This document shows positions 42,982 through 64,000 of a DNA stretch of 64,000 nucleotides, in pieces (the stretch's first letter is position 1; each line of letters opens with the position of its first letter). The position numbers were made by a program, and so were the translations under genes. This stretch comes from Camelus dromedarius (lineage: Eukaryota), in assembly GCF_036321535.1 (NCBI RefSeq), contig NC_087451.1, positions 19,716,001-19,780,000 on the forward strand, read 5' to 3'. Below the pieces are notes generated by a model, which worked only from the letters and a program-made list of their open reading frames with translations, did no database searches and was not told where the DNA came from.

Positions 42982-45900
42982 ATGTCAGCCCAGTCTCTTC
43001 CCACAGCAACACCCCCTACCCAGAAGCCCCCTCGGATCATCCGCCCCCGCCCCCCTTCTCGCCCCCGGACTGCCCAGTCCCCCGGGCCCCACCACAACGG
43101 CTCCTCTCCGCAAGAACCTCCCCTCACTGCCAATGATGCCCCCAACCTAATGTGCACCCCCATCTTCTGGGAGCCCCCAGCCTCGTCCCTCAAGCCCCCA
43201 GCCTTTCTGCCCCCATCGGCTTCTAAAGCCAGCCTCGACTCCCAGACTTCCCCAGACTCTCCTTCCGGCACCCCCAGTCCCGGGTCCCGGCGCTCCATCT
43301 CCCCGGAACCTACTCCCCGGTCTCCAGTACCCCCACCCAAACCCTCTGGGTCACCCAACACACCTCTGCCCCTGCACCCTACGGCCGGGGTCCTGGCCCA
43401 GGCTGGCTCTGCCTCGGCCCCAGGCACTGTGCGGAGACTGGCTGGCAGGTTTGAATGGGGCACTGAAGGCAGGATCCAGGCTGTGGACACCGTGGAGTCG
43501 GGTCCCCCAGGGGGAGTGGATGTGAATGGGGAGACAGAGCCTCCTCAGGGCATCCTCGCTGGGAGTGGGTCCCAGGAGAACGGCCCTCCAGGTAAGCCCC
43601 TCATGGACCCGCTCAATCCAGCTCCTCTTCTTTGTTTTTAGTCCTTCAAGACTGGGTAGTTTCAGGGACTATTTTTTCAAAAATGGATTCTGTGTTTGGA
43701 AAAATCTGGTTTTCATATTTCTGGGGGTTTGAAGAGTCAGGGTGGAGGAGATAGAGGCCTAGCGCTGGACTTCCATGTTCCTGCTGCTGGGCAGGTGAAG
43801 GGGAGGGCGGAGGCCTGGGCAGGTCCTGAGTGTGCCCCTGCCCTCCACAGATGCTGCCCTGGTCTGCCCTCCCTGCTGCCCCTGTGTCTGCCATGTCACC
43901 CGGCCTGGCCTGGAGCTCCGATGGGTGCCTGTAGGGGGCTACGAGGAGGGATCCAGGGCCCCCTGCCGGGCCTCCCCGCTGCGGACCTCTCGCTCCCGCC
44001 CCAGCCCTCCAAGCCTCAGTCACCCCCCAGTCGTCCTCACGTCCTACCGCTCCACCGCCGAGCGCAAACTCCTGCCACCCCTCAAACCCCCCAAACCAAC
44101 TCGGGTCAGACAGGACGTCACCACCTCTGGGGACCCCCCACAGCCAGAGCTCGATCTGCCCTCCGAAGATGGAATCCAAGCAGGTACAGGGCCTGGAGGA
44201 GTGGACCTCTGTGCTGGGAAGAGAAGGGGTGGAGGCGGAGTAGTCTAAAAACCAACTAACTACAACCCCCAGCAGGCCCTGGGCTGCTTCCGGCTGGGGC
44301 CCGGGGTGGGGGGGCTGACCGGAGTTGTAGTTTTTATAGTAACAGTCTCTGCTGGGCCCAGAGTCAGGAGTCCTGGCCTGGGGATCCTGGAGGTTTGTCT
44401 CTTCACTCTGAGTTCCCTCTCTAGGGGATGGTCCTGACGGAGCCCCTCAGCAAGATCCTCCAGCAACCACGGAGGGCAGGTACCGAACACCCCCACCCTT
44501 ACCCCTACCTGAGAGCAGACTAACCTTGGCGTCCACCTAAATCCTACCCTCACAAGTGTGCAGAGAAGGGCTAGGGCTATAGGGACCAGCAGCCCTGGTT
44601 TCTAATCCCAGCTTTGTCCCTTTTTACACTTCACTATACCTCTCCAGGTCTCAGCTTCCTCACCTGTGAAATACCAAAAATACCATACGGTTGTTGAGGT
44701 ATGATGATAGTTGAAGAGCCAGGCCCAGAGTCCCCCCACCTGATCTTCTATTGAAATTATTGTCTGCAAATACATTTGGCAACCAGGAACATCTCTCCTG
44801 TGTTATTTGGGCCTGTTAGTCAGATTCACCACCCTTATCAGAGTTAATCTGTCTGAGGCGACTCATTTATTCGATAAACACTTACTGGAGTTTGTATCTG
44901 CTCTCTAGAACCCCTGTACCAGAATTATTCTCCTGGGTTTTTACTCTGGGTGAATGGGTGTGCAGTGGTGCTGATCCCCAGGACAGAGTGGGGATGTGTA
45001 AGAGCTGAGTTGGACCAGAGGGGAGGGTGTTAGAGCACATTCTTAGCATGCATGAGGCCCTGGGTTCAATCCCAAGTGTCTCCTCTAAGAATAAATAAAC
45101 AAACCTAATTACCACCCACTCCCCCCCTAAAAAACTTAAAAGAAAAAAAAAGAGTTGGGCTGGACTCTGTTGAGTTGCACCAAGGCACAAGTAGGACATT
45201 CCAGACAATGGTCGTTACATGAGAGCCCTGGAGACAGGGGCTTGGAAGTCTCTGGTACACGGTAGTCGACATCACAGGAACAGAGGGCCCCACTTAACAG
45301 AGCTTCACATACAACAGGCACATGAAAAATCTGGGGTTTGGTCAGGGTCCCTGCATACAACCCCTACCACTATCATGTGGATAGCACCCCCTGCAGGCGT
45401 GCACCGGTGGTGGTTCTGGGGGACCTCATCCCTTTCTCTTTCCACAGGGATGAGGAGGGGCTGGAGGAGCTGAAAGAGCAGAACTGGGAGCTGCCCCTGC
45501 AGGACGGTGAGGGGCTCTGAGACCACTGAGCAGTGGGAAGGGGTCTGGGGCGCTGGACTTCCCTGACGTGCTACGTCTGCTCTCCAGAACCCCTGTATCA
45601 GACTTACCGAGCAGCCGTGCTGTCAGAGGAGCTGTGGGGGGTCGGTGAAGATGGGAGTCCGTCTCCACCCAATCCTGGAGAAGCTCCCACCTTTGCCCGG
45701 CCACCGGGACCTCGCAACACGCTGTGGCAGGAGCTCCCAGCTGTGCGAGCCAGCGGCCTCCTGGAGACCCTCAGCCCCCAGGAGAGGCGCATGCAGGAGG
45801 TGGGTGCACCTGGGGCTGAGCAGGGCGGGCGGCGGGGAGGGGCGTGGGTCCTGGGTCTTGGCCTGGCTGGGAGCTGGGCGTTCCACTCCTGCCCTGCTCT

Positions 45901-48900
45901 TCGCCTCAGAGCCTGTTCGAGGTGGTGACATCCGAGGCCTCGTACCTGCGCTCCCTACGGCTGCTGACTGACACCTTTGTGCTGAGCCAGGCTCTCCGGG
46001 ACACGCTCACCCCTCGGGATCACCACACTCTCTTCTCCAACGTGCAGCGAGTCCAGGGAGTCAGTGAGCGGTCAGTGGGGTCCTGACCTCTTCACAAATC
46101 AGGCCTTGGGAGAAAGCACTCCAGAGCTTTCTCTCTGTCCCCAGGCCTTCCTCCCAGGGTCCAGTTAGGGCCCAGATCTTCCCTCAAGAACCCAGGACAC
46201 CTGGCTCTCTGCACCCTCTCCATTGCTTGTTCCCCACTCCTTCAGGTTTCTGGGGAAGTTACTGTCCCGTGTGCGCTCCTCCCCGCACATCAGCGACCTG
46301 TGCGACGTGGTGCATGCCCACGCCGTGGGGCCGTTCTCGGTGTACGTGGATTACGTCCGGAACCAGCAGTATCAGGAGGAGACTTACAGCCGCCTGATGT
46401 GAGTGTCAGAGGCACGGCCACATCCATTCCCCTTACGGGAGGAAGTTGGAGAGCAGGGTTGGGGGCCAGGCCAGGGCGGGTTGAGGGGTTAGGGCCTTGA
46501 GGCAGACGCCAGCCTGAACCTGCCTCTGCAGGGACACGAACATGCGCTTCTCCGCGGAGCTGCGGCGGCTGCAGAGCCTCCCGAAGTGCCAGCGGCTCCC
46601 GCTGCCGTCTTTCCTGCTGCTGCCATTTCAGCGCATCACGCGGCTCCGCATGCTGCTGCAGGTATCATCCTGGCTTGGGCCCTTCTCAGTCCCACCAAGC
46701 CCGTTGGAGAATTCTCCCCAAGGGCCTCCTGCCCCGCCATCACTATCTCCCACCCCACCAGGAACACAGGAGTACCTTAGTCAGGACTCCTAATCTGGGC
46801 GTCTCTATCTGGGACCCACCAAGCCCGACCTAAAAGTCTCAAGGAGCAGTCTGGGTGCAGGAAAAGAGCCTCTGGCTAGAGACCTGAATTCTAGCCTTAG
46901 CTCTGCCACTAACTGGCTGAGTGACCTTGGGCAGGTCCCCTTCTCTCTCCGGGCCTCAGGGGGAATGTGGTGACTGGTCTTTGAGGTTTTCTCAGCTGTA
47001 TCTTTCATTGTATGCCTTCCCAGTGGGGGTGATATCACCCCCCTCCAAGGAGGTAGAAACTCATTCTTTGGTGGGAGAGATGAAAAAATCTTAAGGATTC
47101 CAATGGTTGTGGTACTCCAAAGGGCCGTGCTACCTAAATAGATATACAGTATATCTGCGGTATTAAAATTCTTTGGGTGGGGAGGGGGGAGCCGCGGGTG
47201 ACAATTAGAGGAAAAATGTCTAAAAAGGCTCCTTAGTCGGGGATACTGAAAAAAGGGGTGAGAAATACTCTTCTATTGCAGAATAGATATTTCTCCCTAA
47301 ACCAAGTCACCCAATGTGGGGATCTCAGTGTAAAGGCCTCTAGCTAGATTATCAGTGTCTTTATGTCTTATTCAACTTTACATCTCCCCAGTGTAGACAA
47401 CAACATAATAATGATACTAATCATAATAGCTAACAGCCCTTGGATGTCTGTTCTAGACGCGGTTCTTTTTTTAATGGAGGAACTGAGGATTGAACCCAGG
47501 ACCTTGGGCAGGCTAAGCATGGGCTCTGCCACAGAGCTACACCCATCCCTCCCAGATACGGTTCTAAGTGCTATACACCTCGTTTAACCTTACCAATGAC
47601 TGTGAGAGTAGGAACTGTTATTGACTCCACTGTATAGATGAGGAAACTGAGGCTCAGAGAGGTTAAATAACTTGCCACAAATGACACAGATAATAACTGA
47701 TGGAGACAAACTTTAAATCCAGGCACTCTTAACCCTGTGGTACATTGTTTGTACTAATAGTTGTGGTTAATAATTATTAAAATAATAGCAACCCTCTTTT
47801 CAGCATTTTCAGCATGCTAAGTACTTTGCATATAGCTCCTTGCTGAATCCTCACAACAATGCTTTTGGTATAATAGGTGGGAGTTATTCCCACTTTACAG
47901 ATGGGGAAACTGAGACTCAGAGAGGTACAGTGACTTGCTCAGGGCTATGCACACAGTGTGTGGTGAGGCTGGTCCCCCAGCCCTGTGAACCCCAAAATGC
48001 CAAGCCCAGCAGGGTCCTCTGAGCTGCAGCCCTTCTGAATCCCAGAGCCGCAGAGTAGAGGTCCAGTGACCATTTCTTTTGTGCCCAGAATATCCTGCGC
48101 CAGACAGAGGAGGGGTCCAGCCGCCAGGAGAACGCCCAGAAGGCCCTGGGTGCTATCAGCAAGGTGGGCAGGGGGATGCGGGGGCTGGGAGAGGTGATGA
48201 GGTGGTAGGGAGAGATGGAAGGGGTGGAAGGGAGAAAGGGTGGGTGACTTGGCTCTCCTTTCCCAGATCATTGAGCGTTGCAGCGCCGAGGTGGGGCGCA
48301 TGAAGCAGACGGAGGAGCTGATCCGTCTCGCACAGCGGCTGCGCTTCCACAAAGTCAAGGTTGGTCCCTACCCAGACTCCTCGCTTCCCTTTTCCCGTGG
48401 TGCTGTGGAGAAGTCAGACCCTCCTCCCTGTTCCCCCACAGGCCCTGCCCCTGGTCTCCTGGTCCAGGCGCCTGGAGTTGCAGGGGGAGCTGACAGAATT
48501 AGGATGCAGAAGGGGAGGTGTGCTCTTTGCCTCGCGCCCCCGCTTCACCCCCCTCTGCCTGCTGCTCTTCAGTGATCTGCTGCTCATCACTCAGCCCAAG
48601 AGGTGGGTCCGAGGGCTGGAGGGAACCCAGGCAGGGGGCAGGGGGAGGAGGAGTCCAGCTGGACCTCTGTTCTCCCTTTGAACTTCCTCTTCCCTGGGCA
48701 GTGGGCAGCGGCTACAGGTCCTGGACTATGCCCATCGCTCCCTGGTCCAGGCCCAGCAGGTCCCCGACCCATCTGGACCTCCTACCTTCCGCCTCTCCCT
48801 TCTCAGCAACCACCAGGGCCGCCCCACCCACCGGCTACTCCAAGCTTCATCCCTGTAAGTTATGTCTCCTTCAGAAAACACCCTTGGGAGCCTCACCTGA

Positions 48901-50195
48901 CCTGTCAGTGTCCCCCACCCTCATCCCCAGTCTCTCTCCTCTGAAGTCCCTGCCAACCCCCAGGAAGATCTCCTGGGCCAGCTGTGACCCGTTCCTTATA
49001 TTCCTACCAGATCAGACATGCAGCGCTGGCTGGGAGCCTTCCCTACCCCAGGCCCCCTTCCCTGCTCCCCCGACACCATCTTTGAGGATTGTGGTGAGTG
49101 TCCCCTGGAGGGGAGGCAGGAAGGAGAAGTGAGCCTTTGGGGGAATCTGGGCGAGAAGCTAAAATGAGTCTTGACTCCACTGTAATGTCACCCACCCCCA
49201 GACTGTTCCCAGGAACTCTGTTCAGAGCCTTCCACACCCACTAAGACTGAGGGACGGAGTCCGGAGCCCAGGGCTCCCCTCAAGCACCTACACAAGAGCC
49301 CTGAAGGTGAGAAATTCTTTTATTTATTCATTCAATAAGTATTTATGAAGCACCTATGAGGTGCCACTCACAGTTCTTGGTCCCATGAGCTAAACACGCA
49401 GGTGTTCCTGCCATGCTGGACCACATATTCCAGTGGAGGAGAAACAATAAAGAAGAAACATGATAAATAAGTAAATTTTACAGTGTGTCTGAAGGTGATA
49501 AGTGCTGGTGAAAAACAAAAGTGGAGCAGAGTCAAGGCAGTCAGGAGTCCCGGGGTTGGGTAGTGTTACAAGTTTAAATAGAGAGGTCAAGGTGGACCTC
49601 ATTGAGGAGGTGTCTGGGGGAAGAATGTCCTAGAGGGAGGCAGAGGTCAGGGCAAAGGCGCTATGGCCAGTGTGTTTGAGGAACAGTAAGGAGGCCAGTG
49701 TGGCTGGAGGGAGTGAGGACAGTGGGGAGAAGCAGATGAGGTCATAGAGATAACGGGGACCAGATTGCGTGGGTCCTCGTAGCTTCCTGTTAGTACTCTG
49801 GCCCTCACTCTGAGTGAGATGGGGAGTCAGTGCGGGGCTTGACAGAGGAGGGACCCCGACCCTCTTTGCTGCTGCGGTCTCCTCCACCTCTAATGGCCCT
49901 TTTACCAGTGCTCCAGGCTTTTCCACTAATTCCCACTCCCGCCATGACCCTCAGGCATTTGACCTCCTCCTGGGCTTTCTCTCCCCCCTGACCTACCCCC
50001 TGCCCCAGCCCCACTTGGGCACTCGTTGTCTCTTTTTCCCCAGGCTGGCTGAAGGGGCTTCCCGGGGCCTTCCCTGCCCAGCTGGTGTGTGAAGTCACAG
50101 GGGAACACGAAAGGAGGAAGCACCTTCGCCAGCACCAGAGGCTCCTGGAGGCTGTTGGGCCCTCTTCAGGCCCCCCTGGTGCCCCCCCACTCTAA
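42982..50195 (+). CDS. ARHGEF15: Rho guanine nucleotide exchange factor 15 (Ephexin5), 844 aa
   Basis: Exons 42982-43591, 43851-44183, 44425-44479, 45448-45506, 45588-45799, 45910-46070, 46246-46398, 46532-46661, 48089-48163, 48267-48359, 48442-48602, 48702-48854, 49011-49093, 49202-49306, 50044-50195 (2535 nt). Pro-rich N-terminus MSAQSLPTATPPTQKPPR, EPLYQTY motif, DH domain (ESLFEVVTSEASYLRSL, SFLLLPFQRITRL), PH domain (LLLFSDLLLITQPK); GT-AG introns. Confidence 0.97.
45020..45151 (+). mobile_element. tRNA-Ala-derived SINE (camelid Vic-1-like), ARHGEF15 intron
   Basis: cttagcatgcatgaggccctgggttcaatccc B-box core, aataaataaacaaacctaattacc tail, A-tail, imperfect TSD aagag(c/t)tg(a/g)g(t/c)tggac. 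Confidence 0.85.
47466..47553 (-). mobile_element. tRNA-derived SINE (Vic-1-like), ARHGEF15 intron
   Basis: Reverse complement of the same head (gattgaacccaggacc...gctaagcatg), T-tail, TSD-like agac/tacggttct. Confidence 0.8.
47570..47960. mobile_element. MIR elements
   Basis: MIR core gatgaggaaactgaggctcagagaggttaaataacttgcc (twice). Other MIRs at about 430-575, 17040-17160, 31600-31720, 46870-46960, 56750-56930, 59030-59200, 61150-61400. Confidence 0.8.
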
Positions 50196-58811: not shown

Positions 58812-60006
58812 CAGAGGAAGACTCCTCACAGGATTTGAATTCCTGATTCTAACCATTCTGAGTGACCTCATGTGACCTCATGATCCATTATTAATACCCC
58901 TTAAATTAATTTTGCTTCCATTCCATCATTTGCAGCACTCATATGCAAGCGTGCCTGCCAAACACCTCTGTGTTTTTGCTCCTTCTGTTTGCTAGTGAAT
59001 GGTGCCAAACCATTACAACAATAACTTAACAATAATAACTCCACTTTCTGGGAATTTACCATGAACCAGAGTGCTTTTTGTTCATGATCTCATTCAATTC
59101 CCAAACCAAGCTGGAAACAAATATTACTGTCCTGGGTTACAGATGAGTAATCTGAGGCCATGTGATTCCTTCAGGTTCACAAGGTTGTTTATTCATCCCT
59201 CTGCCTGTTGGACCCAAAAGCCTGTGTTCTTAATCACATGTATCACTGTATTTGCAAAGCAAACCAACTCTGGTGGGATTCAAACTCACATCCCAAATTG
59301 GAAAGACTCTCATCTCATGAGAATTTCAGGGGCTAAGTGAGGTCTGGAAGCCCTTGTGATCAGGCTGCCGCAGGTGACTCAGATTTATTTTCCTATAGCT
59401 TAAAAGAGAGGTGAGAAAAATCTTCTCAGACTGTGTGAAGCCCCTAAATTGCCTCCTCATCCTCTGCCCTCCCCCTTCTGGTGCTGAGAGAAAAAGAAGA
59501 GAAAAGGTAAAAACTGGGGATGGAATGGGAACTGGGGACCTGATGTGAGCAGAGGTTGGGGAGGTAAGGGAGAAGATGGATGACGTGTGTAGAAGGCATA
59601 TCGAAATGTTTCCCTGGGGACAAGCTCCCCTCCTGCTCCATCAGGAGCACTTGGCATGGGGTTAGGGCAGAGGACATGGGAAGAGAGGAGACCCTCAGCG
59701 ACCACGGCTCTCAGGCAAAGGGAGGCATCAGACCCACAATTCTGAGTTGGGGCCCGAGGAGCAGGGTTTCCAGAAAGAGCTGGAGCTGAAGCTGTAGGTC
59801 CCCTCCCCCATTTGACACCCCCCCCCCTCCAGGAATATTCCATGGCAGTTAGTGGCCCTGTCCTGCTGAATGGGTTGTTTTTTCCCAGATCCCAGACCCT
59901 GAGGCGGCCACTGATGATAATATTTAAAAGATGAGGGACAACTGACTCTGGCAAGGGAATGGAGAGATGGGGTGGAGGATAGCAGGGAAGTCAGGGAGTG
60001 CTCAAG

Positions 60007-63000
60007 ATGGGGACAGGGGACATTAGGGATGAGTTTCCTGGGTCAGGAGGAGACAGCGATGAGCATCAGAAGACTAGAAACGGCTGGGAGGGCTGGGAAG
60101 CAGGATGGGGTGGAGGTGAGCCTGGAACAAGATGAAGGGGTGCAGAACTGCGTCTCCGCCCCGGCCAGTAACAGGCAATTGCCTGTGGACCAACATGTGC
60201 AGCGTCGCCGGGTCTCTCCGCTGCCCCTGCAATGGAGGATTACACACAGCTCCCGCTGGATAGCGCAGATGTTGGCCTCGGAGCTCAGCCTGATTGCCTT
60301 CATCTTGCTGCTGGTCATGGTCTTCTCCAAGAATTGGCTGTACCTCTCGAAGTGTCGGTTCTATCAGCGCTGGCCCACGAATGTTACCACCAGAATCTAC
60401 ACGACGGCTCACATCATGTCCATGGGGCTCCTGCAGATCTGCAAATCCAAGAGCTGTTCCAACTCAGAAGAATGGGAAAGGTGAGCCCCTTACACCCCCA
60501 TCCTACACCAGGGCGGCAGCCTGCCTTGGCCTGGCCATCAGCACCCCGGTATTCTTGGGCCTTCTCTCTGGTCATCCCCACTTTTTTGGCCTGTAAGATG
60601 GTTCCACTGGCCCCAAGACCCCCAGGGATCATTTTTCCTCCCCGATTAGCCTGACCCAATGGAAAGTGTCACTGCTTTTGATAAGGCTGGGGGAGCCAAG
60701 TCTGTGCTTGCGGAAATGTTGTGAGGGGCATGGCCTCTGGGCGCATGTGAATCACTCATGGGAGGTGGGGATGGCCATTCTCCAGACTTGCACACCCAGA
60801 GCTTGAGGAGGCCCCAGAATGCTCTCCCTCAGGCCCACATTCCTACCACTGGTCTTCTCTCCGGCCTCAGGCTTTGCTTTTCTGGGCCAGCTCTGGGTTT
60901 CCACATCTGGTTACCCTGTTCCTTCCTTCCCAGGTTTCTTGCGGCTACTTCATTCCCTAGTCTTGTTAGTTTCCTGTCGTGTTGTCCCCTCACCTCCCTG
61001 GTTTGGGCCTCCTTTCTCAGCGCTTTTGAACCTCACCCCCACCCCAATTCCACTTCTTCACCTTGCTAACATTAAAAAAAAAGTTACACAGCTGTTATTT
61101 ACTTCTATTATGAAAGCAACATGTCCTTATTCCAATAAATTTAGGGAAACATTTATGGCATACTTATCCTATTTGCTTAATTTAATCCTCAATCAATCCT
61201 AACAGCTAGAGATAATCATCCTTATTTTACCGATAAGAAAACAGACTCAGGTTACCTTGCTCAGGGTCATACAGCTATTAGGTTGAACATGAAATGACCA
61301 ATTTTTGACGTTTTTTTCACCGACAAAAAGGGCAAATTCATATGGATCAACCTAACAGTGGCAGGTTTACAATGGTAATTCAGGTGTGTCTGGCTCCAAA
61401 ACTCATGTAAGTATCTCCATGAGTTTTCGCTCCTCAGGGCTAGTCAAAGACAGTCTCCACTGGCTGTTGATTCAGCACTCGGTTGTTTCCAGGCTTCTTT
61501 TTGTCCTATTGAACATGTTTTGAATGATTTTTACATAGTTATATTCCTCATAAATAATTTTATATATTTTAAATTACTTTTATTATTTATTTTATATTAT
61601 TTTAAAATTTATCTTTAGGAGATATAATAAACATTTCCATATTATGACCGTCCTATTCAACTTAATAGATTTAGCATTTTTTATTTGACTATTTTGTCTA
61701 TTTTTGCTTTTAATTTTTATTTAAAGAAAATTTTTTTTCAGTTTTCTTTTGTGGGGGAGGTAATTAGGTTTATTTGTTTATTGTTAGTGGAGGTACTGGG
61801 GATTGAATCCAGGACCGCCTGCATGCTAAGCATCTGCTCTAACACTTTGAGCTATACTCTTCCCACTTATTTGTCTATTTTTGGCAAATTTATTTCCAGC
61901 TTCCTATTTGAGAAAAAAAAAAAGAAGCAAAAAAGTTGGTTAATCATAAAGTTTTTTCTGGGTTTAGTATTCTTTGGAAAAGATTTCCCAAAGTGGATTT
62001 ACTGGACCAAAGAATATAAATATTTTAAGGCTTTGAATAAAAATTTTCATGTTGCTTTCAAAAAGGATGATAGCATTTTATGCTTCCACTAACAATATAT
62101 AGGGGAGGGTATAGCTTAGGCAGTAGAGTACCTACTTAGCATGCAGGAAGTCCTGGGTTCAATCCCCAGTACCTCCTCTGAGAATAAATAAACCTAATTA
62201 CCTCTCCCCTCCCCCCTGCCAAAATAAAATAAGTAAATAATATAATAAATAAACAATATATGAAAAGGCTGTTGCATTGAAGCTCTGCCAGCAATGACTG
62301 TTAACTTTAAACATATGAGTAGGCAATTTCTTTCTGATTTAAAAAAAGTTGCATAGTCATTGTTAGAAATGCAGAAAGTTTAAGAAAGGAAATAAAAATG
62401 ACCTAAAATTTCTCCACACAGATGTAATCACAGTTGGCATTATACTGGATATACGTCTAGTCTTTTGTGTATCTATATAAAATAAATATATTCGTTTATT
62501 TTTATTTTTACAAATACATCCTTTTATTTTTTTCAAAATTGCCATCATTTTATATGCTGTGTGTTGCAAAGTCCACTTTTCAGTGGTAAGCATTTATTTG
62601 TACCAAAAAATCATTATTCTATAACTCACCTCTGTTTAAAATTTATTTGATTAGGTCGTGTATGTACAGAGTGAAAATTCAAAAAATACAATAGATTACA
62701 TAGTGAAGTAAGCCTCGCACCTGTGGCTCCCAGGTTTCCTCCTTAGTTTCTTCCTAGAGACATTCTGTTTAGAGACAACCAACTATCAGATCATCATTTT
62801 TTAATTCATTTTTTTATATCATCATTTTTAACAATCATATACTAACCCGCTCTATGGGTACACTATAATTTATTTAAGAAATATCTTATTAGACATATAA
62901 ATAATTCTGCAAAGAAGATCTTTGTACATAAATTTTTGTGCATTATCTTGGATTATTTCCTCAACATAAATTCCAGGAGGAAACATTGCTGGGTCAAAGG

Positions 63001-64000
63001 GCTTTAACAATTTAGATTTTAGAAAGGGGGATATTTTGTGCCACGTGACGCAGCAGAAATGCTGCCCACCAGCAGTGTGTCAAAGCCCCTCTTTTCTCTG
63101 ACTCCTTTCCTACACAAGATATCAGCAATTTTGTTTTGATCTTTGCTAATTTGATACATCAAAAGATCACATTTAATTTACAATTCTTTTTTTCCTTTTT
63201 CAGTTTTATTAGGTAGAATTATTACAGTTTGACTGCACATACACATTATATTGCATGTAAATACATATAAACAGTATACTGCATTTTTTGTTTTAGTTTA
63301 CATATATGTACTGATCATTGTTTCTAAGAACAGATCAGAGCTTTAGCTTTTTAAACTTACATAGTTATCAAAGGAATAAAGCCAACTACTAAATAAGAAT
63401 CAACAGAACGCGGTAATCCAATCATAAAGGACAGTCAAATGTGCTTACACATATTCAAGAAATCAGTCATCTAAGTTAAAAATAGTAAGTAGTTCATTTT
63501 GTCATTATTACTATTATTTTTTAGATTCTTCATGGAAATTATATCACATAGCTTTTTTCTTTCTCTTTATGGCCCACTTCACTTAGAATGATGATCTTCA
63601 GGTCCACCATACTGCTGCAAATGGCATTATTTTATTCTTTTTTTATGCACATTTAATTTACAATTCTTGGTGTTGGGTTTCAGGTGTTTGTTGGACATTC
63701 AAATACCTTTGAGAATTGCACTTCAAGTCCTCGGTCCATGTTTTCTGTTGAGGTATTTGTTTTCATGTGATTGGAATTATTAAGCAATTTCCACATCAAG
63801 AATCTCTGCCTATGTAACAAGCGGAAGTGGTATTTTATTGTTATCGCACATGTGCATTTCTCTGGTTATGAGGGGGCCTGAACATTTTCTCGTGTTTGCC
63901 CATTTGATTGTATTGTGTCTTTCATGAATCCTTGGTTCATCCTGTTTTCTCATTTTCCCTAGACAGTTTTAAGCTGTGGACAAACCACCCAGCCTTTGGG
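60007..64000 (+). CDS. ODF4: Outer dense fiber protein 4, partial (exon 1 to 60480; exon 2 from 63963 to window end); frame apparently disrupted
   Basis: Exon 1 encodes SPLPLQWRITHSSRWIAQMLASELSLIAFILLLVMVFSKNWLY...MSMGLLQICKSKSCS, donor AAG|GTGAGC at 60480/60481. Exon 2 after ttttccctag encodes DSFKLWTNHPAFG, matching my recollection of mouse ODF4 DNFKMWTIHPVFG. Two apparent +1 shifts (see findings), so it may be a pseudogene, an altered gene or contain sequence errors. Confidence 0.85.
61705..61864 (-). mobile_element. tRNA-derived SINE (Vic-1-like), ODF4 intron
   Basis: Reverse complement of head and tail (ggtaattaggtttattt...gaggtactggggattgaatccaggacc); tttgtctattttt flanks both sides. 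Confidence 0.85.
62102..62251 (+). mobile_element. tRNA-derived SINE (Vic-1-like), ODF4 intron
   Basis: ggggagggtatagcttaggcagtagag...gtcctgggttcaatccccagtacctcc, family tail, perfect TSD aacaatatat (62091-62100 and 62252-62261). Confidence 0.9.
63189..63647 (-). mobile_element. Chimeric retroposed insertion (L1 fragment plus non-L1 polyadenylated tail)
   Basis: Perfect 21-bp direct repeats cacatttaatttacaattctt at 63168-63188 and 63648-63668; T-tract and ttttatt at the left end; L1 3' fragment at about 63500-63647. Confidence 0.75.

What the first reader, a model, noticed from the sequence alone, without database searches (positions are those of the whole stretch)
60465..63972. ODF4 exon 1/2 frameshift with a potential rescue by an acceptor 4 nt downstream
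Seen: exon 1 ends TCA GAA GAA TGG GAA AG (phase 2), one base more than TCA GAG AAT GGG AAA G (SENGK, phase 1, as recalled for human and mouse). Exon 2 at 63963 needs phase 1 (G|AC AGT TTT AAG CTG TGG = DSFKLW). As sequenced, splicing gives R-Q-F-TAA (63970-63972), truncating the protein after the first hydrophobic segment. But the acceptor reads ttttccctAGacAG: using the CAG at 63964-63966 gives AG|T TTT AAG CTG TGG = SFKLWTNHPAFG, restoring the frame with EEWES in place of ENGKDS. With the start-site shift, ODF4 is either a camelid pseudogene or a gene kept alive by two bypasses. ODF4 is a sperm-tail protein, so either outcome is of interest.
Basis: partly seen in the sequence, partly recalled or inferred. 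Interest (0 to 1): 0.75.

Follow-up and report, generated by a model that had tools for sequence, protein, structure and literature searches.

The report
Camel ODF4 frameshift rescued by splicing
Camels and alpacas carry one extra base at the end of the first exon of the sperm-tail gene ODF4, and their RNA shows the gene still reads correctly because splicing uses an acceptor 4 bases further on; cattle and deer reached the same solution independently.

Summary

- **Extra base.** Exon 1 ends at 60480 in phase 2 (…SEEWE+AG). Other mammals end in phase 1 (…SENGK+G). The extra A is present in three contig sets from three studies, in a second Camelus assembly and in alpaca.
- **Splicing.** RNA contigs show both junctions. 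60480→63963 gives R-Q-F-stop (run X1, depth 31). 60480→63967 restores the frame (X1, depth 43.8; X4, a 1266-nt contig).
- **Intact ORF.** A separate 2090-nt mRNA contig uses 63967 and carries an intact 307-aa ORF. RefSeq C. bactrianus XP_045380754.1 is the same model.
- **Mis-modelled relatives.** The dromedary, C. ferus and alpaca RefSeq models are "LOW QUALITY" base-deleted versions, or start out of frame.
- **Ruminant parallel.** Bovids and deer have a different lesion at the same spot (−2 nt) and use the same +4 acceptor (SNSEWE|SFKLW). This includes Swiss-Prot Q0II41.
- **Independent origin.** The locus tree follows the species tree. An AU test rejects a camelid+ruminant clade (p = 5.5e-13).
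- **Possible predisposition.** All artiodactyls sampled read TAGACAG at the acceptor. Horse and jackal read CAGATAG; mole and siamang read CAGACAG.
- **Start-site shift.** It is shared with horse, dog, hippo and cattle, so it is not a camelid defect.

No protein-level evidence was obtained. This is an instance of a known kind of event.

The parts
59815..60480 (+). ODF4 exon 1 as seen in mRNA. The 5' end is at or upstream of 59815. The main ORF starts at ATG 60029-60031 (MSFLGQEET...) and ends in phase 2 with ...GAA AG.
   Evidence: mRNA contig L005 is collinear with window 59815-60480. Contigs X1 59840-60480, X2 59842-60838 and X4 59869-60478 cover it. Translation.
60464..60480 (+). TCAGAAGAATGGGAAAG, the last 17 bases of exon 1. 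One extra A (60468/60469) relative to the ancestral TCAGAGAATGGGAAAG turns SENGK+G (phase 1) into SEEWE+AG (phase 2).
   Evidence: Multi-species alignment. No indel in three runs.
60481..63962 (+). Intron 1 (GT...AG) when the ancestral acceptor is used. It extends to 63966 when the +4 acceptor is used. It contains high-copy repeats.
   Evidence: Joints with GT..AG ends. Very high contig depth at 61716-61860, 62004-62291 and 63156-63731.
63960..63962 (+). Proximal (ancestral) acceptor TAG; the exon then starts at 63963. In camelids this junction is out of frame.
   Evidence: Joint 60480->63963 in X1, depth 31. It is the productive site in hippo, where the model is reproduced exactly.
63964..63966 (+). 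Distal acceptor CAG; the exon then starts at 63967. This is the in-frame junction in camelids: AG|T = Ser, then FKLW.
   Evidence: Joint 60480->63967 in X1 (depth 43.8) and X4 (depth 48.6, 1266-nt contig). Also in L005 and in P0078 and P0143.
63970..63972 (+). TAA, a premature stop reached only by transcripts spliced at 63963 (…EEWE-R-Q-F-stop, 153 aa).
63967..64000 (+). First 34 bases of productive exon 2 (FKLWTNHPAFG...). The window ends here. The rest of exon 2 and exons 3 and 4 lie beyond it.
   Evidence: Exons 2-4 were read in L001, L004 and L005.

Best explanation
Camelid ODF4 is a live protein-coding gene. A 1-nt insertion at the 3' end of exon 1 moved that exon from phase 1 to phase 2. 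An ancestral second AG lies 4 nt inside exon 2 (tAG ACAG|T; the AG of the Ser codon AGT). Splicing to this AG removes 4 nt, so the net change is -3 nt. The protein is unchanged except that ENGKD becomes EEWE. These residues lie in the loop between the first and second hydrophobic segments. Shown: the insertion, both junctions in RNA, and an intact 307-aa ORF in Camelus and alpaca. Inferred: transcripts spliced at the old TAG acceptor end after R-Q-F and are probably removed by nonsense-mediated decay; the +4 product is translated and functional; the exon-2-skipped short isoform annotated in human and horse is no longer in frame in camelids. No compensating second mutation was needed, because the insertion simply switched which of two pre-existing competing acceptors is productive. 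In all artiodactyls sampled the first AG is a weaker TAG and the second a CAG. This may explain why the same switch also became fixed independently in pecoran ruminants, through a 2-nt deletion.
For: Insertion real. Both junctions in RNA: (X1: 31 vs 43.8; X4: +4 only, 1266-nt contig). Full-length mRNA contig L005 has 4 exons, the +4 junction and a 307-aa ORF. The same model is RefSeq C. bactrianus P0078. The alpaca genome spliced at +4 gives a clean 307-aa ORF, with no further lesion in exons 2-4. From the intron indel rate between camel and alpaca, the chance of no frameshifting indel in 921 nt of CDS is about 0.03-0.04. In the exon-1 core there are 0 nonsynonymous against 3 synonymous differences between camel and alpaca, and the camel-hippo dN/dS (0.47) is like cattle-hippo (0.50). 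Ruminant parallel, including bovine cDNA-based Swiss-Prot Q0II41 and curated NP_001421971.1; the banteng model is reproduced exactly with -2 nt and the +4 acceptor. Independent origin. Acceptor states TAGACAG / CAGATAG / CAGACAG. Odf4 knockout male mice are infertile (PMC9941515), so loss would be costly.
Against: There is no protein-level evidence for the EEWESFK junction. Depths come from assembled contigs, not read counts, so the roughly 40:60 ratio in X1 is only indicative. The X1 junction contigs have just 28 letters on the shorter side. The tissue of the RNA runs is known only as 'reproductive system' or is coded. dN/dS within camelids rests on 7 substitutions in the core, and in exons 2-4 alone it is 3N:1S (omega about 0.9, uninformative). 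A large share of transcripts still uses the out-of-frame acceptor. No +4 junction product was found among database ORFs from pig, horse or dog, so ancestral dual use of the two AGs is not shown.
Confidence: 0.85

Rival explanations
1. ODF4 is a transcribed unitary pseudogene in camelids. On this view the +4 junction is splicing noise, and the intact downstream ORF reflects too little time for decay.
For: The out-of-frame junction is abundant in X1. Within-camelid dN/dS for exons 2-4 is uninformative (3N:1S). Three RefSeq pipelines treated the locus as needing correction.
Against: The +4 junction is the major or only form in the contigs of X1, X4 and L005. The insertion predates the Camelus-Vicugna split, yet both keep a 307-aa ORF with no other lesion. 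The same architecture is the standard coding gene throughout Bovidae and Cervidae. The camelid branch shows no higher dN/dS than the cattle branch.
Confidence: 0.08
2. The functional product is an N-terminally truncated 191-aa protein. It would be translated from an internal ATG in the shifted frame of exon 1 (about 60380) on transcripts spliced at the old acceptor 63963. This is how the earlier RefSeq models for dromedary isoform X1 and alpaca are built.
For: The ORF exists (MLPPESTRRL...KNGKDSFKLW..., P0141 and P0142). The 63963 junction is present in RNA.
Against: This ATG lies about 350 nt downstream of the main ATG and behind several other AUGs. The product would lack the conserved first hydrophobic segment and loop. 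The exon-1 core is perfectly conserved at the protein level between camel and alpaca in the main frame (0N:3S), which this reading does not explain.
Confidence: 0.03
3. The frame is restored mainly by a different acceptor further inside exon 2 (GCC AG|G ATC, about 9 nt beyond the window end). This gives ...EEWE-R-ITFCL, as in the 2012 C. ferus model P0001.
For: Camelids have AGG (Arg) where other species have AAG (Lys). This creates an AG that would be in frame.
Against: No contig shows it. X4 and L005 continue through FKLWTNHPAFGVAR. It would delete 15 conserved residues.
Confidence: 0.02
4. The extra base is a sequencing or assembly error.
For: NCBI flagged three camelid models as LOW QUALITY.
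Against: The base is present in the window, two other assemblies of two genera, and contigs from four runs.
Confidence: 0.01

Closest known systems
Ruminant ODF4 (Bos taurus Swiss-Prot Q0II41 / NP_001421971.1; also Bubalus, Capra, Ovis, Cervus, Odocoileus, Rangifer)
   Same: Exon 1 ends in phase 2, and exon 2 is joined at the same CAG 4 nt inside the ancestral exon, giving ...EWE|SFKLW. Transcripts using the old TAG acceptor and ending EWERQF* also exist (P0009, P0227).
   Different: The lesion is a 2-nt deletion, not a 1-nt insertion, so the loop is one residue shorter (EWE vs EEWE). The origin is independent.
Evolutionary splice-site shifts and compensated frameshifts, as handled by CESAR/TOGA comparative annotation (PMC4914097)
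   Same: An exon boundary moves between species while the reading frame and the exon are preserved. Homology-based pipelines misread this as a gene-breaking mutation.
   Different: The cases described there usually lose the ancestral site and shift by multiples of 3, or pair two indels within one exon. Here both AGs stay intact and both are used. The shift is 4 nt, and it compensates an indel in the preceding exon.
NAGNAG / tandem acceptors (own knowledge: Hiller et al. 2004; related GYNGYN donors in PMC1779574)
   Same: Two closely spaced AGs compete at the second step of splicing, and both are used in the same tissue.
   Different: The spacing is 4 nt, not 3. One of the two products is therefore always frameshifted and prematurely terminated, rather than differing by one residue.
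Unproductive splicing coupled to nonsense-mediated decay (PMC12322889)
   Same: The 63963 junction creates a stop codon in exon 2, upstream of two further exon junctions. This is the configuration expected to trigger decay.
   Different: Decay and any regulatory use were not tested here. The unproductive isoform is the former productive one.
Human, horse and sea-lion short ODF4 isoform (exon 2 skipped, ...ENGK|V..., e.g. P0040, P0015)
   Same: Same gene and the same exon 1 and exon 3.
   Different: In camelids exon-2 skipping runs into a stop after 13 codons, so this isoform cannot be made. The LOW QUALITY RefSeq models P0002 and P0144, which show it, depend on deleting a genomic base.

Membership tests
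ODF4 orthologue | Full-length sequence similarity to ODF4 of other mammals | tested here: met
   E = 1e-86 to 1e-20 against named ODF4 proteins. 72% identity to gray whale over the C-terminal 164 aa.
ODF4 orthologue | Conserved four-coding-exon structure with GT-AG introns | tested here: met
   exon boundaries are homologous in camel, alpaca, banteng and hippo. Only the exon 1 / exon 2 phase differs.
ODF4 orthologue | Position directly downstream of ARHGEF15 on the same strand | tested here: met
   ARHGEF15-like exons at 43150-49356 (+), ODF4 exon 1 at 60227-60478 (+).
ODF4 orthologue | Expression in the male reproductive tract | tested here: inconclusive
   the RNA runs holding it are labelled 'reproductive system metagenome' or are coded. 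The tissue is not stated.
Frameshift compensated by a splice-site shift | A real frame-changing indel in a coding exon relative to the ancestral state | tested here: met
Frameshift compensated by a splice-site shift | An alternative splice site whose offset restores the frame, used in RNA | tested here: met
   joint 60480->63967 in X1 and X4; L005.
Frameshift compensated by a splice-site shift | Downstream coding sequence intact and conserved | tested here: met
   The dN/dS support is only weak.
Frameshift compensated by a splice-site shift | Protein with the new junction is made | not testable with these tools
   No camelid sperm proteome could be searched. Paper searches gave nothing.
Unitary pseudogene | Disabling mutation that no transcript bypasses | tested here: not met
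Unitary pseudogene | Accumulation of further stops, frameshifts or splice-site losses | tested here: not met
   The two 1-nt insertions in the C. ferus assembly L001 are absent from the window, alpaca and the mRNA.
Unitary pseudogene | Relaxed constraint (dN/dS near 1) on the affected lineage | tested here: inconclusive
   too few camel-alpaca substitutions. The long-branch values resemble those of cattle.
NAGNAG tandem acceptor | Two AGs exactly 3 nt apart, so that both products stay in frame | tested here: not met
   the AGs at 63961-63962 and 63965-63966 are 4 nt apart.

The most novel reading that the evidence does not exclude
The artiodactyl acceptor TAG-ACAG may be a standing two-way switch. 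On this reading both AGs are used at comparable rates in every artiodactyl, so a large share of ODF4 mRNA is always unproductive. Any +1 or -2 indel at the end of exon 1 then swaps which isoform is productive at little cost. The C-to-T change that weakened the first AG in the artiodactyl ancestor would have made this possible, and the swap was taken twice, in camelids and in pecorans. It also abolishes the exon-2-skipped short isoform in both lineages.
Probability: 0.3. Interest if true: 0.55.

Novelty: new member of a known kind. Interest (0 to 1): 0.4.

Why it matters
**Annotation.** The result settles a conflict in public annotation. The correct camelid ODF4 model is the one in C. bactrianus (XP_045380754.1). 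The 'LOW QUALITY' dromedary, wild camel and alpaca models alter a genomic base that is real. The 191-aa and exon-2-skipped models are artefacts. Similar mis-models exist in deer, goat and ibex.

**Gene-loss screens.** An automated screen would wrongly score ODF4 as inactivated in camelids and ruminants. Odf4 is required for male fertility in mice (PMC9941515).

**Evolution.** This is a clean, RNA-supported example of a frameshift absorbed by a pre-existing tandem acceptor. It occurred twice in one order by different indels. It leads to a testable prediction about acceptor competition (TAG/CAG against CAG/TAG).

Tried and rejected
1. **dN/dS**. Pairwise NG86 values for ODF4 are about 0.45-0.6 in all comparisons. 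The camel-alpaca comparison has too few changes, so it is not decisive either way.
2. **Pfam**. The camel and cattle proteins give no hit. Hippo gives only sub-threshold claudin/PMP22 hits. I therefore make no family claim beyond 'four hydrophobic segments'.
3. **Use of the +4 acceptor in phase-1 species.** No ORF of the form ...ENGK-VLSCGQ was found among the database members for pig, horse, dog or whale. This is weak negative evidence only, because contigs drop rare and decay-prone forms. Loci of other species cannot be given to the reads tools.
4. **Shared origin of the camelid and ruminant states** (an old 'Selenodontia' grouping, or lineage sorting). Rejected by the locus tree and the AU test.
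5. **Literature.** 'ODF4' with 'frameshift', 'camel', or 'bull' plus 'proteom' returned no paper on this event and no proteomic detection.
6. **Assembly artefact.** Rejected.
7. **Internal acceptor of the old C. ferus model P0001.** No RNA support.
8. **Not attempted.** Structure prediction and complex prediction were not run, because they would not change the verdict.
Full report
**What is in the sequence**

- Exon 1 of ODF4 lies on the + strand. The reading frame homologous to ODF4 of other mammals runs ...SKSCSNSEEWE and ends with the two bases AG at 60479-60480. GTGAGC follows.
- The next coding piece begins behind ttttccctAG at 63963 and reads ACAGTTTTAAGCTGTGG.
- Joining 60480 to 63963 gives AGA CAG TTT TAA, a stop at 63970-63972.
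- Joining 60480 to 63967, behind the second AG at 63965-63966, gives AGT TTT AAG CTG TGG, which is SFKLW.
- The window ends at 64000, so only 34-38 bases of exon 2 are in it.
- ARHGEF15-like exons lie upstream on the same strand at 43150-49356, as expected for ODF4.

**The extra base is real and old**

- Named ODF4 proteins of whale, hippo, pig, horse, rhino, dog, primates, rodents, bats and moles all read ...ENGK(D)|SFKLW or close variants.
- At the DNA level, hippo, gray whale, pig, horse, golden jackal, siamang and mole have TCAG-AGAATGGGAAAG|GT. The window, C. ferus (L001) and alpaca (L004) have TCAGAAGAATGGGAAAG|GT.
- Contigs of three runs from three studies (X1, X2, X4) cover the site with no gap or other letter. 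The mRNA contig L005 carries the same bases.
- The insertion therefore predates the split of Camelus and Vicugna and is not an assembly error.

**What the RNA does**

- Two GT..AG joints start from 60480.
  - One goes to 63963 (X1, depth 31).
  - The other goes to 63967 (X1, depth 43.8; X4, depth 48.6, on a 1266-nt contig that begins at 59869).
- In X1 the exon-1 contig stops exactly at 60480. That is what an assembly graph does at a fork, and the two short fork contigs carry the two junctions.
- These are contig depths, not read counts. The shorter side in X1 is only 28 letters, so the ratio is indicative only.
- Independent support comes from a Logan contig of another run (L005, 2090 nt).
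  - It is collinear with window 59815-60480 and uses the +4 junction.
  - It continues through three more exons and carries an uninterrupted 307-aa ORF, MSFLGQEET...EEWESFKLWTNHPAFGVARITFCL...EVLDPE.
- RefSeq C. bactrianus XP_045380754.1 (P0078) is the same model.

**Downstream exons**

- In C. ferus and alpaca, exons 2, 3 and 4 are intact. They have GT-AG boundaries and are 81-89% identical at the protein level to whale and pig.
- The alpaca genome spliced at +4 gives a clean 307-aa protein, with no need for the base deletion implied by its LOW QUALITY RefSeq entry.
- Camel and alpaca introns differ by 2.8%, with about 12 frameshifting indels in 3.5 kb. Neutral drift would therefore have left a 921-nt CDS free of such indels with probability of about 0.03-0.04.
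- dN/dS is not decisive.
  - The gene evolves fast everywhere (0.45-0.6).
  - Camel-hippo (0.47) resembles cattle-hippo (0.50).
  - Between camel and alpaca, the conserved core plus exons 2-4 shows 3 nonsynonymous and 4 synonymous changes (omega about 0.2).
  - The N-terminal 63 residues show 9 nonsynonymous to 2 synonymous changes.

**Consequences for the protein**

- EEWES sits at residues 147-151, between the first hydrophobic segment (about 85-102) and the second (about 166-182). Only a loop changes: ENGKD becomes EEWE.
- Skipping exon 2 gives the annotated in-frame short form in human, horse and others. In camelids it now runs into a stop after 13 codons.
- The junction at 63963 gives a 153-aa product ending RQF. 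Its stop lies upstream of two exon junctions, so decay is expected. That is an inference from the usual rule and was not tested.

**The same solution in ruminants**

- Bos, Bubalus, Capra, Ovis, Budorcas and Capricornis read ...SNSEWE|SFKLW. So do the deer Odocoileus, Cervus, Dama, Rangifer and Muntiacus. This set includes curated NP_001421971.1 and cDNA-based Swiss-Prot Q0II41.
- Banteng and white-tailed deer DNA reads CTC---AGAATGGGAAAG|GT, two bases fewer than the ancestral state.
- Combining this exon 1 with the +4 acceptor reproduces the banteng RefSeq protein exactly. Hippo is reproduced exactly with the old acceptor.
- Cattle transcripts joined at the old acceptor and ending EWERQF* also exist (P0009, P0227).

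**Independent origin**

- A maximum-likelihood tree of about 3.9 kb of aligned ODF4 locus gives (camelids,(pig,(ruminants,(hippo,whale)))). Support values range from 90/93 to 100/100.
- The best tree that holds camelids and ruminants together is 58 log-likelihood units worse (AU p = 5.5e-13). The phase change maps as two events.

**Why artiodactyls**

- The acceptor reads CAGACAG in mole and siamang, CAGATAG in horse and jackal, and TAGACAG in all seven artiodactyl sequences.
- By outgroup comparison, the artiodactyl ancestor changed the first AG from CAG to TAG and kept CAG at +4.
- Closely spaced AGs compete, and CAG is the preferred context. That is established knowledge and was not measured here.
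- This arrangement plausibly raised +4 usage enough for a phase-changing indel in exon 1 to be tolerated. This step is inference.
- I found no +4 product among database ORFs of pig, horse or dog. That is weak evidence either way.

**The start-site remark**

- The frame that begins MGTGDIRDEFPGS (ATG 60007) does end at a stop at 60133-60135.
- However, the frame actually joined to the conserved core, with MS.R.LE..AGKQDG, is the annotated N-terminus in horse, rhino, dog, hippo, whale, pig and cattle as well.
- Alpaca has lost the 60007 ATG (it reads ATA).
- The start-site shift is therefore not a second camelid lesion.

**Known or new**

- The gene model is already public for C. bactrianus and for cattle.
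- The general phenomenon, splice-site shifts and compensated frameshifts that fool homology-based annotation, is described (PMC4914097).
- I found no paper on this event in ODF4.
- I file it as a new member of a known kind. Its modest added interest comes from the convergence and from the testable acceptor-competition idea.

Noticed in passing
window 60007-60135: The ORF starting MGTGDIRDEFPGS matches the N-terminus used in human and in some pig, peccary and whale models. Here it is a short upstream ORF that overlaps the main start at 60029. Alpaca has ATA instead of this ATG. Several further AUGs lie upstream in the mRNA (from 59841).
   Followed up: partly
window 60112-60121: GGAG|GTGAGC inside exon 1 is a consensus-like donor. 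The dromedary RefSeq isoform X2 (P0140, 136 aa) joins it to exon 3. No loose end or joint at this place was listed.
   Followed up: partly
L001 (C. ferus GCA_009834535.1), equivalent to window 60081 and 60148: Two 1-nt insertions in exon 1 are absent from the window, alpaca and the mRNA contig. They are probably assembly errors. They explain the odd MKGCRT start of the C. ferus RefSeq model P0002.
   Followed up: yes
window 60113: G>A (Glu to Lys, GVEVS to GVKVS) in run X2 and in mRNA contig L005 / P0143. Likely a polymorphism or a species difference.
   Followed up: partly
window 59902: A>T in the contigs of X1, X2 and X4, in the 5' untranslated part of exon 1.
   Followed up: no
window 61716-61860, 62004-62291, 63156-63731: Very high summed contig depth in all runs, which points to high-copy repeats in intron 1. 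Loose ends near 62123-62135 read GGGTATAGCTCAGTGGTAGAGC, like the head of a tRNA-derived SINE.
   Followed up: no
Ruminant and camelid protein models (P0150, P0161, P0146/P0148, P0162/P0163, P0164, P0166, P0141, P0142): Many public models trip over this junction. Examples are a LOW QUALITY Dama dama entry, goat SEWERDSFKLW, genes split in two in muntjacs and ibex, and 191-209-aa fragments in sheep, dromedary and alpaca.
   Followed up: partly
P0174 (sheep, 1039 aa) and P0210 (dog): Fused ARHGEF15-ODF4 gene models. In the window the two genes are about 11 kb apart on the same strand (43150-49356 and from 59815).
   Followed up: partly
L001 9881-9883, about 9 nt beyond the window end: Camelids have AGG (Arg) where other mammals have AAG (Lys) in GVA(K/R)ITFC. 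This creates a further in-frame AG, which the 2012 C. ferus model uses as an acceptor. It has no RNA support.
   Followed up: partly
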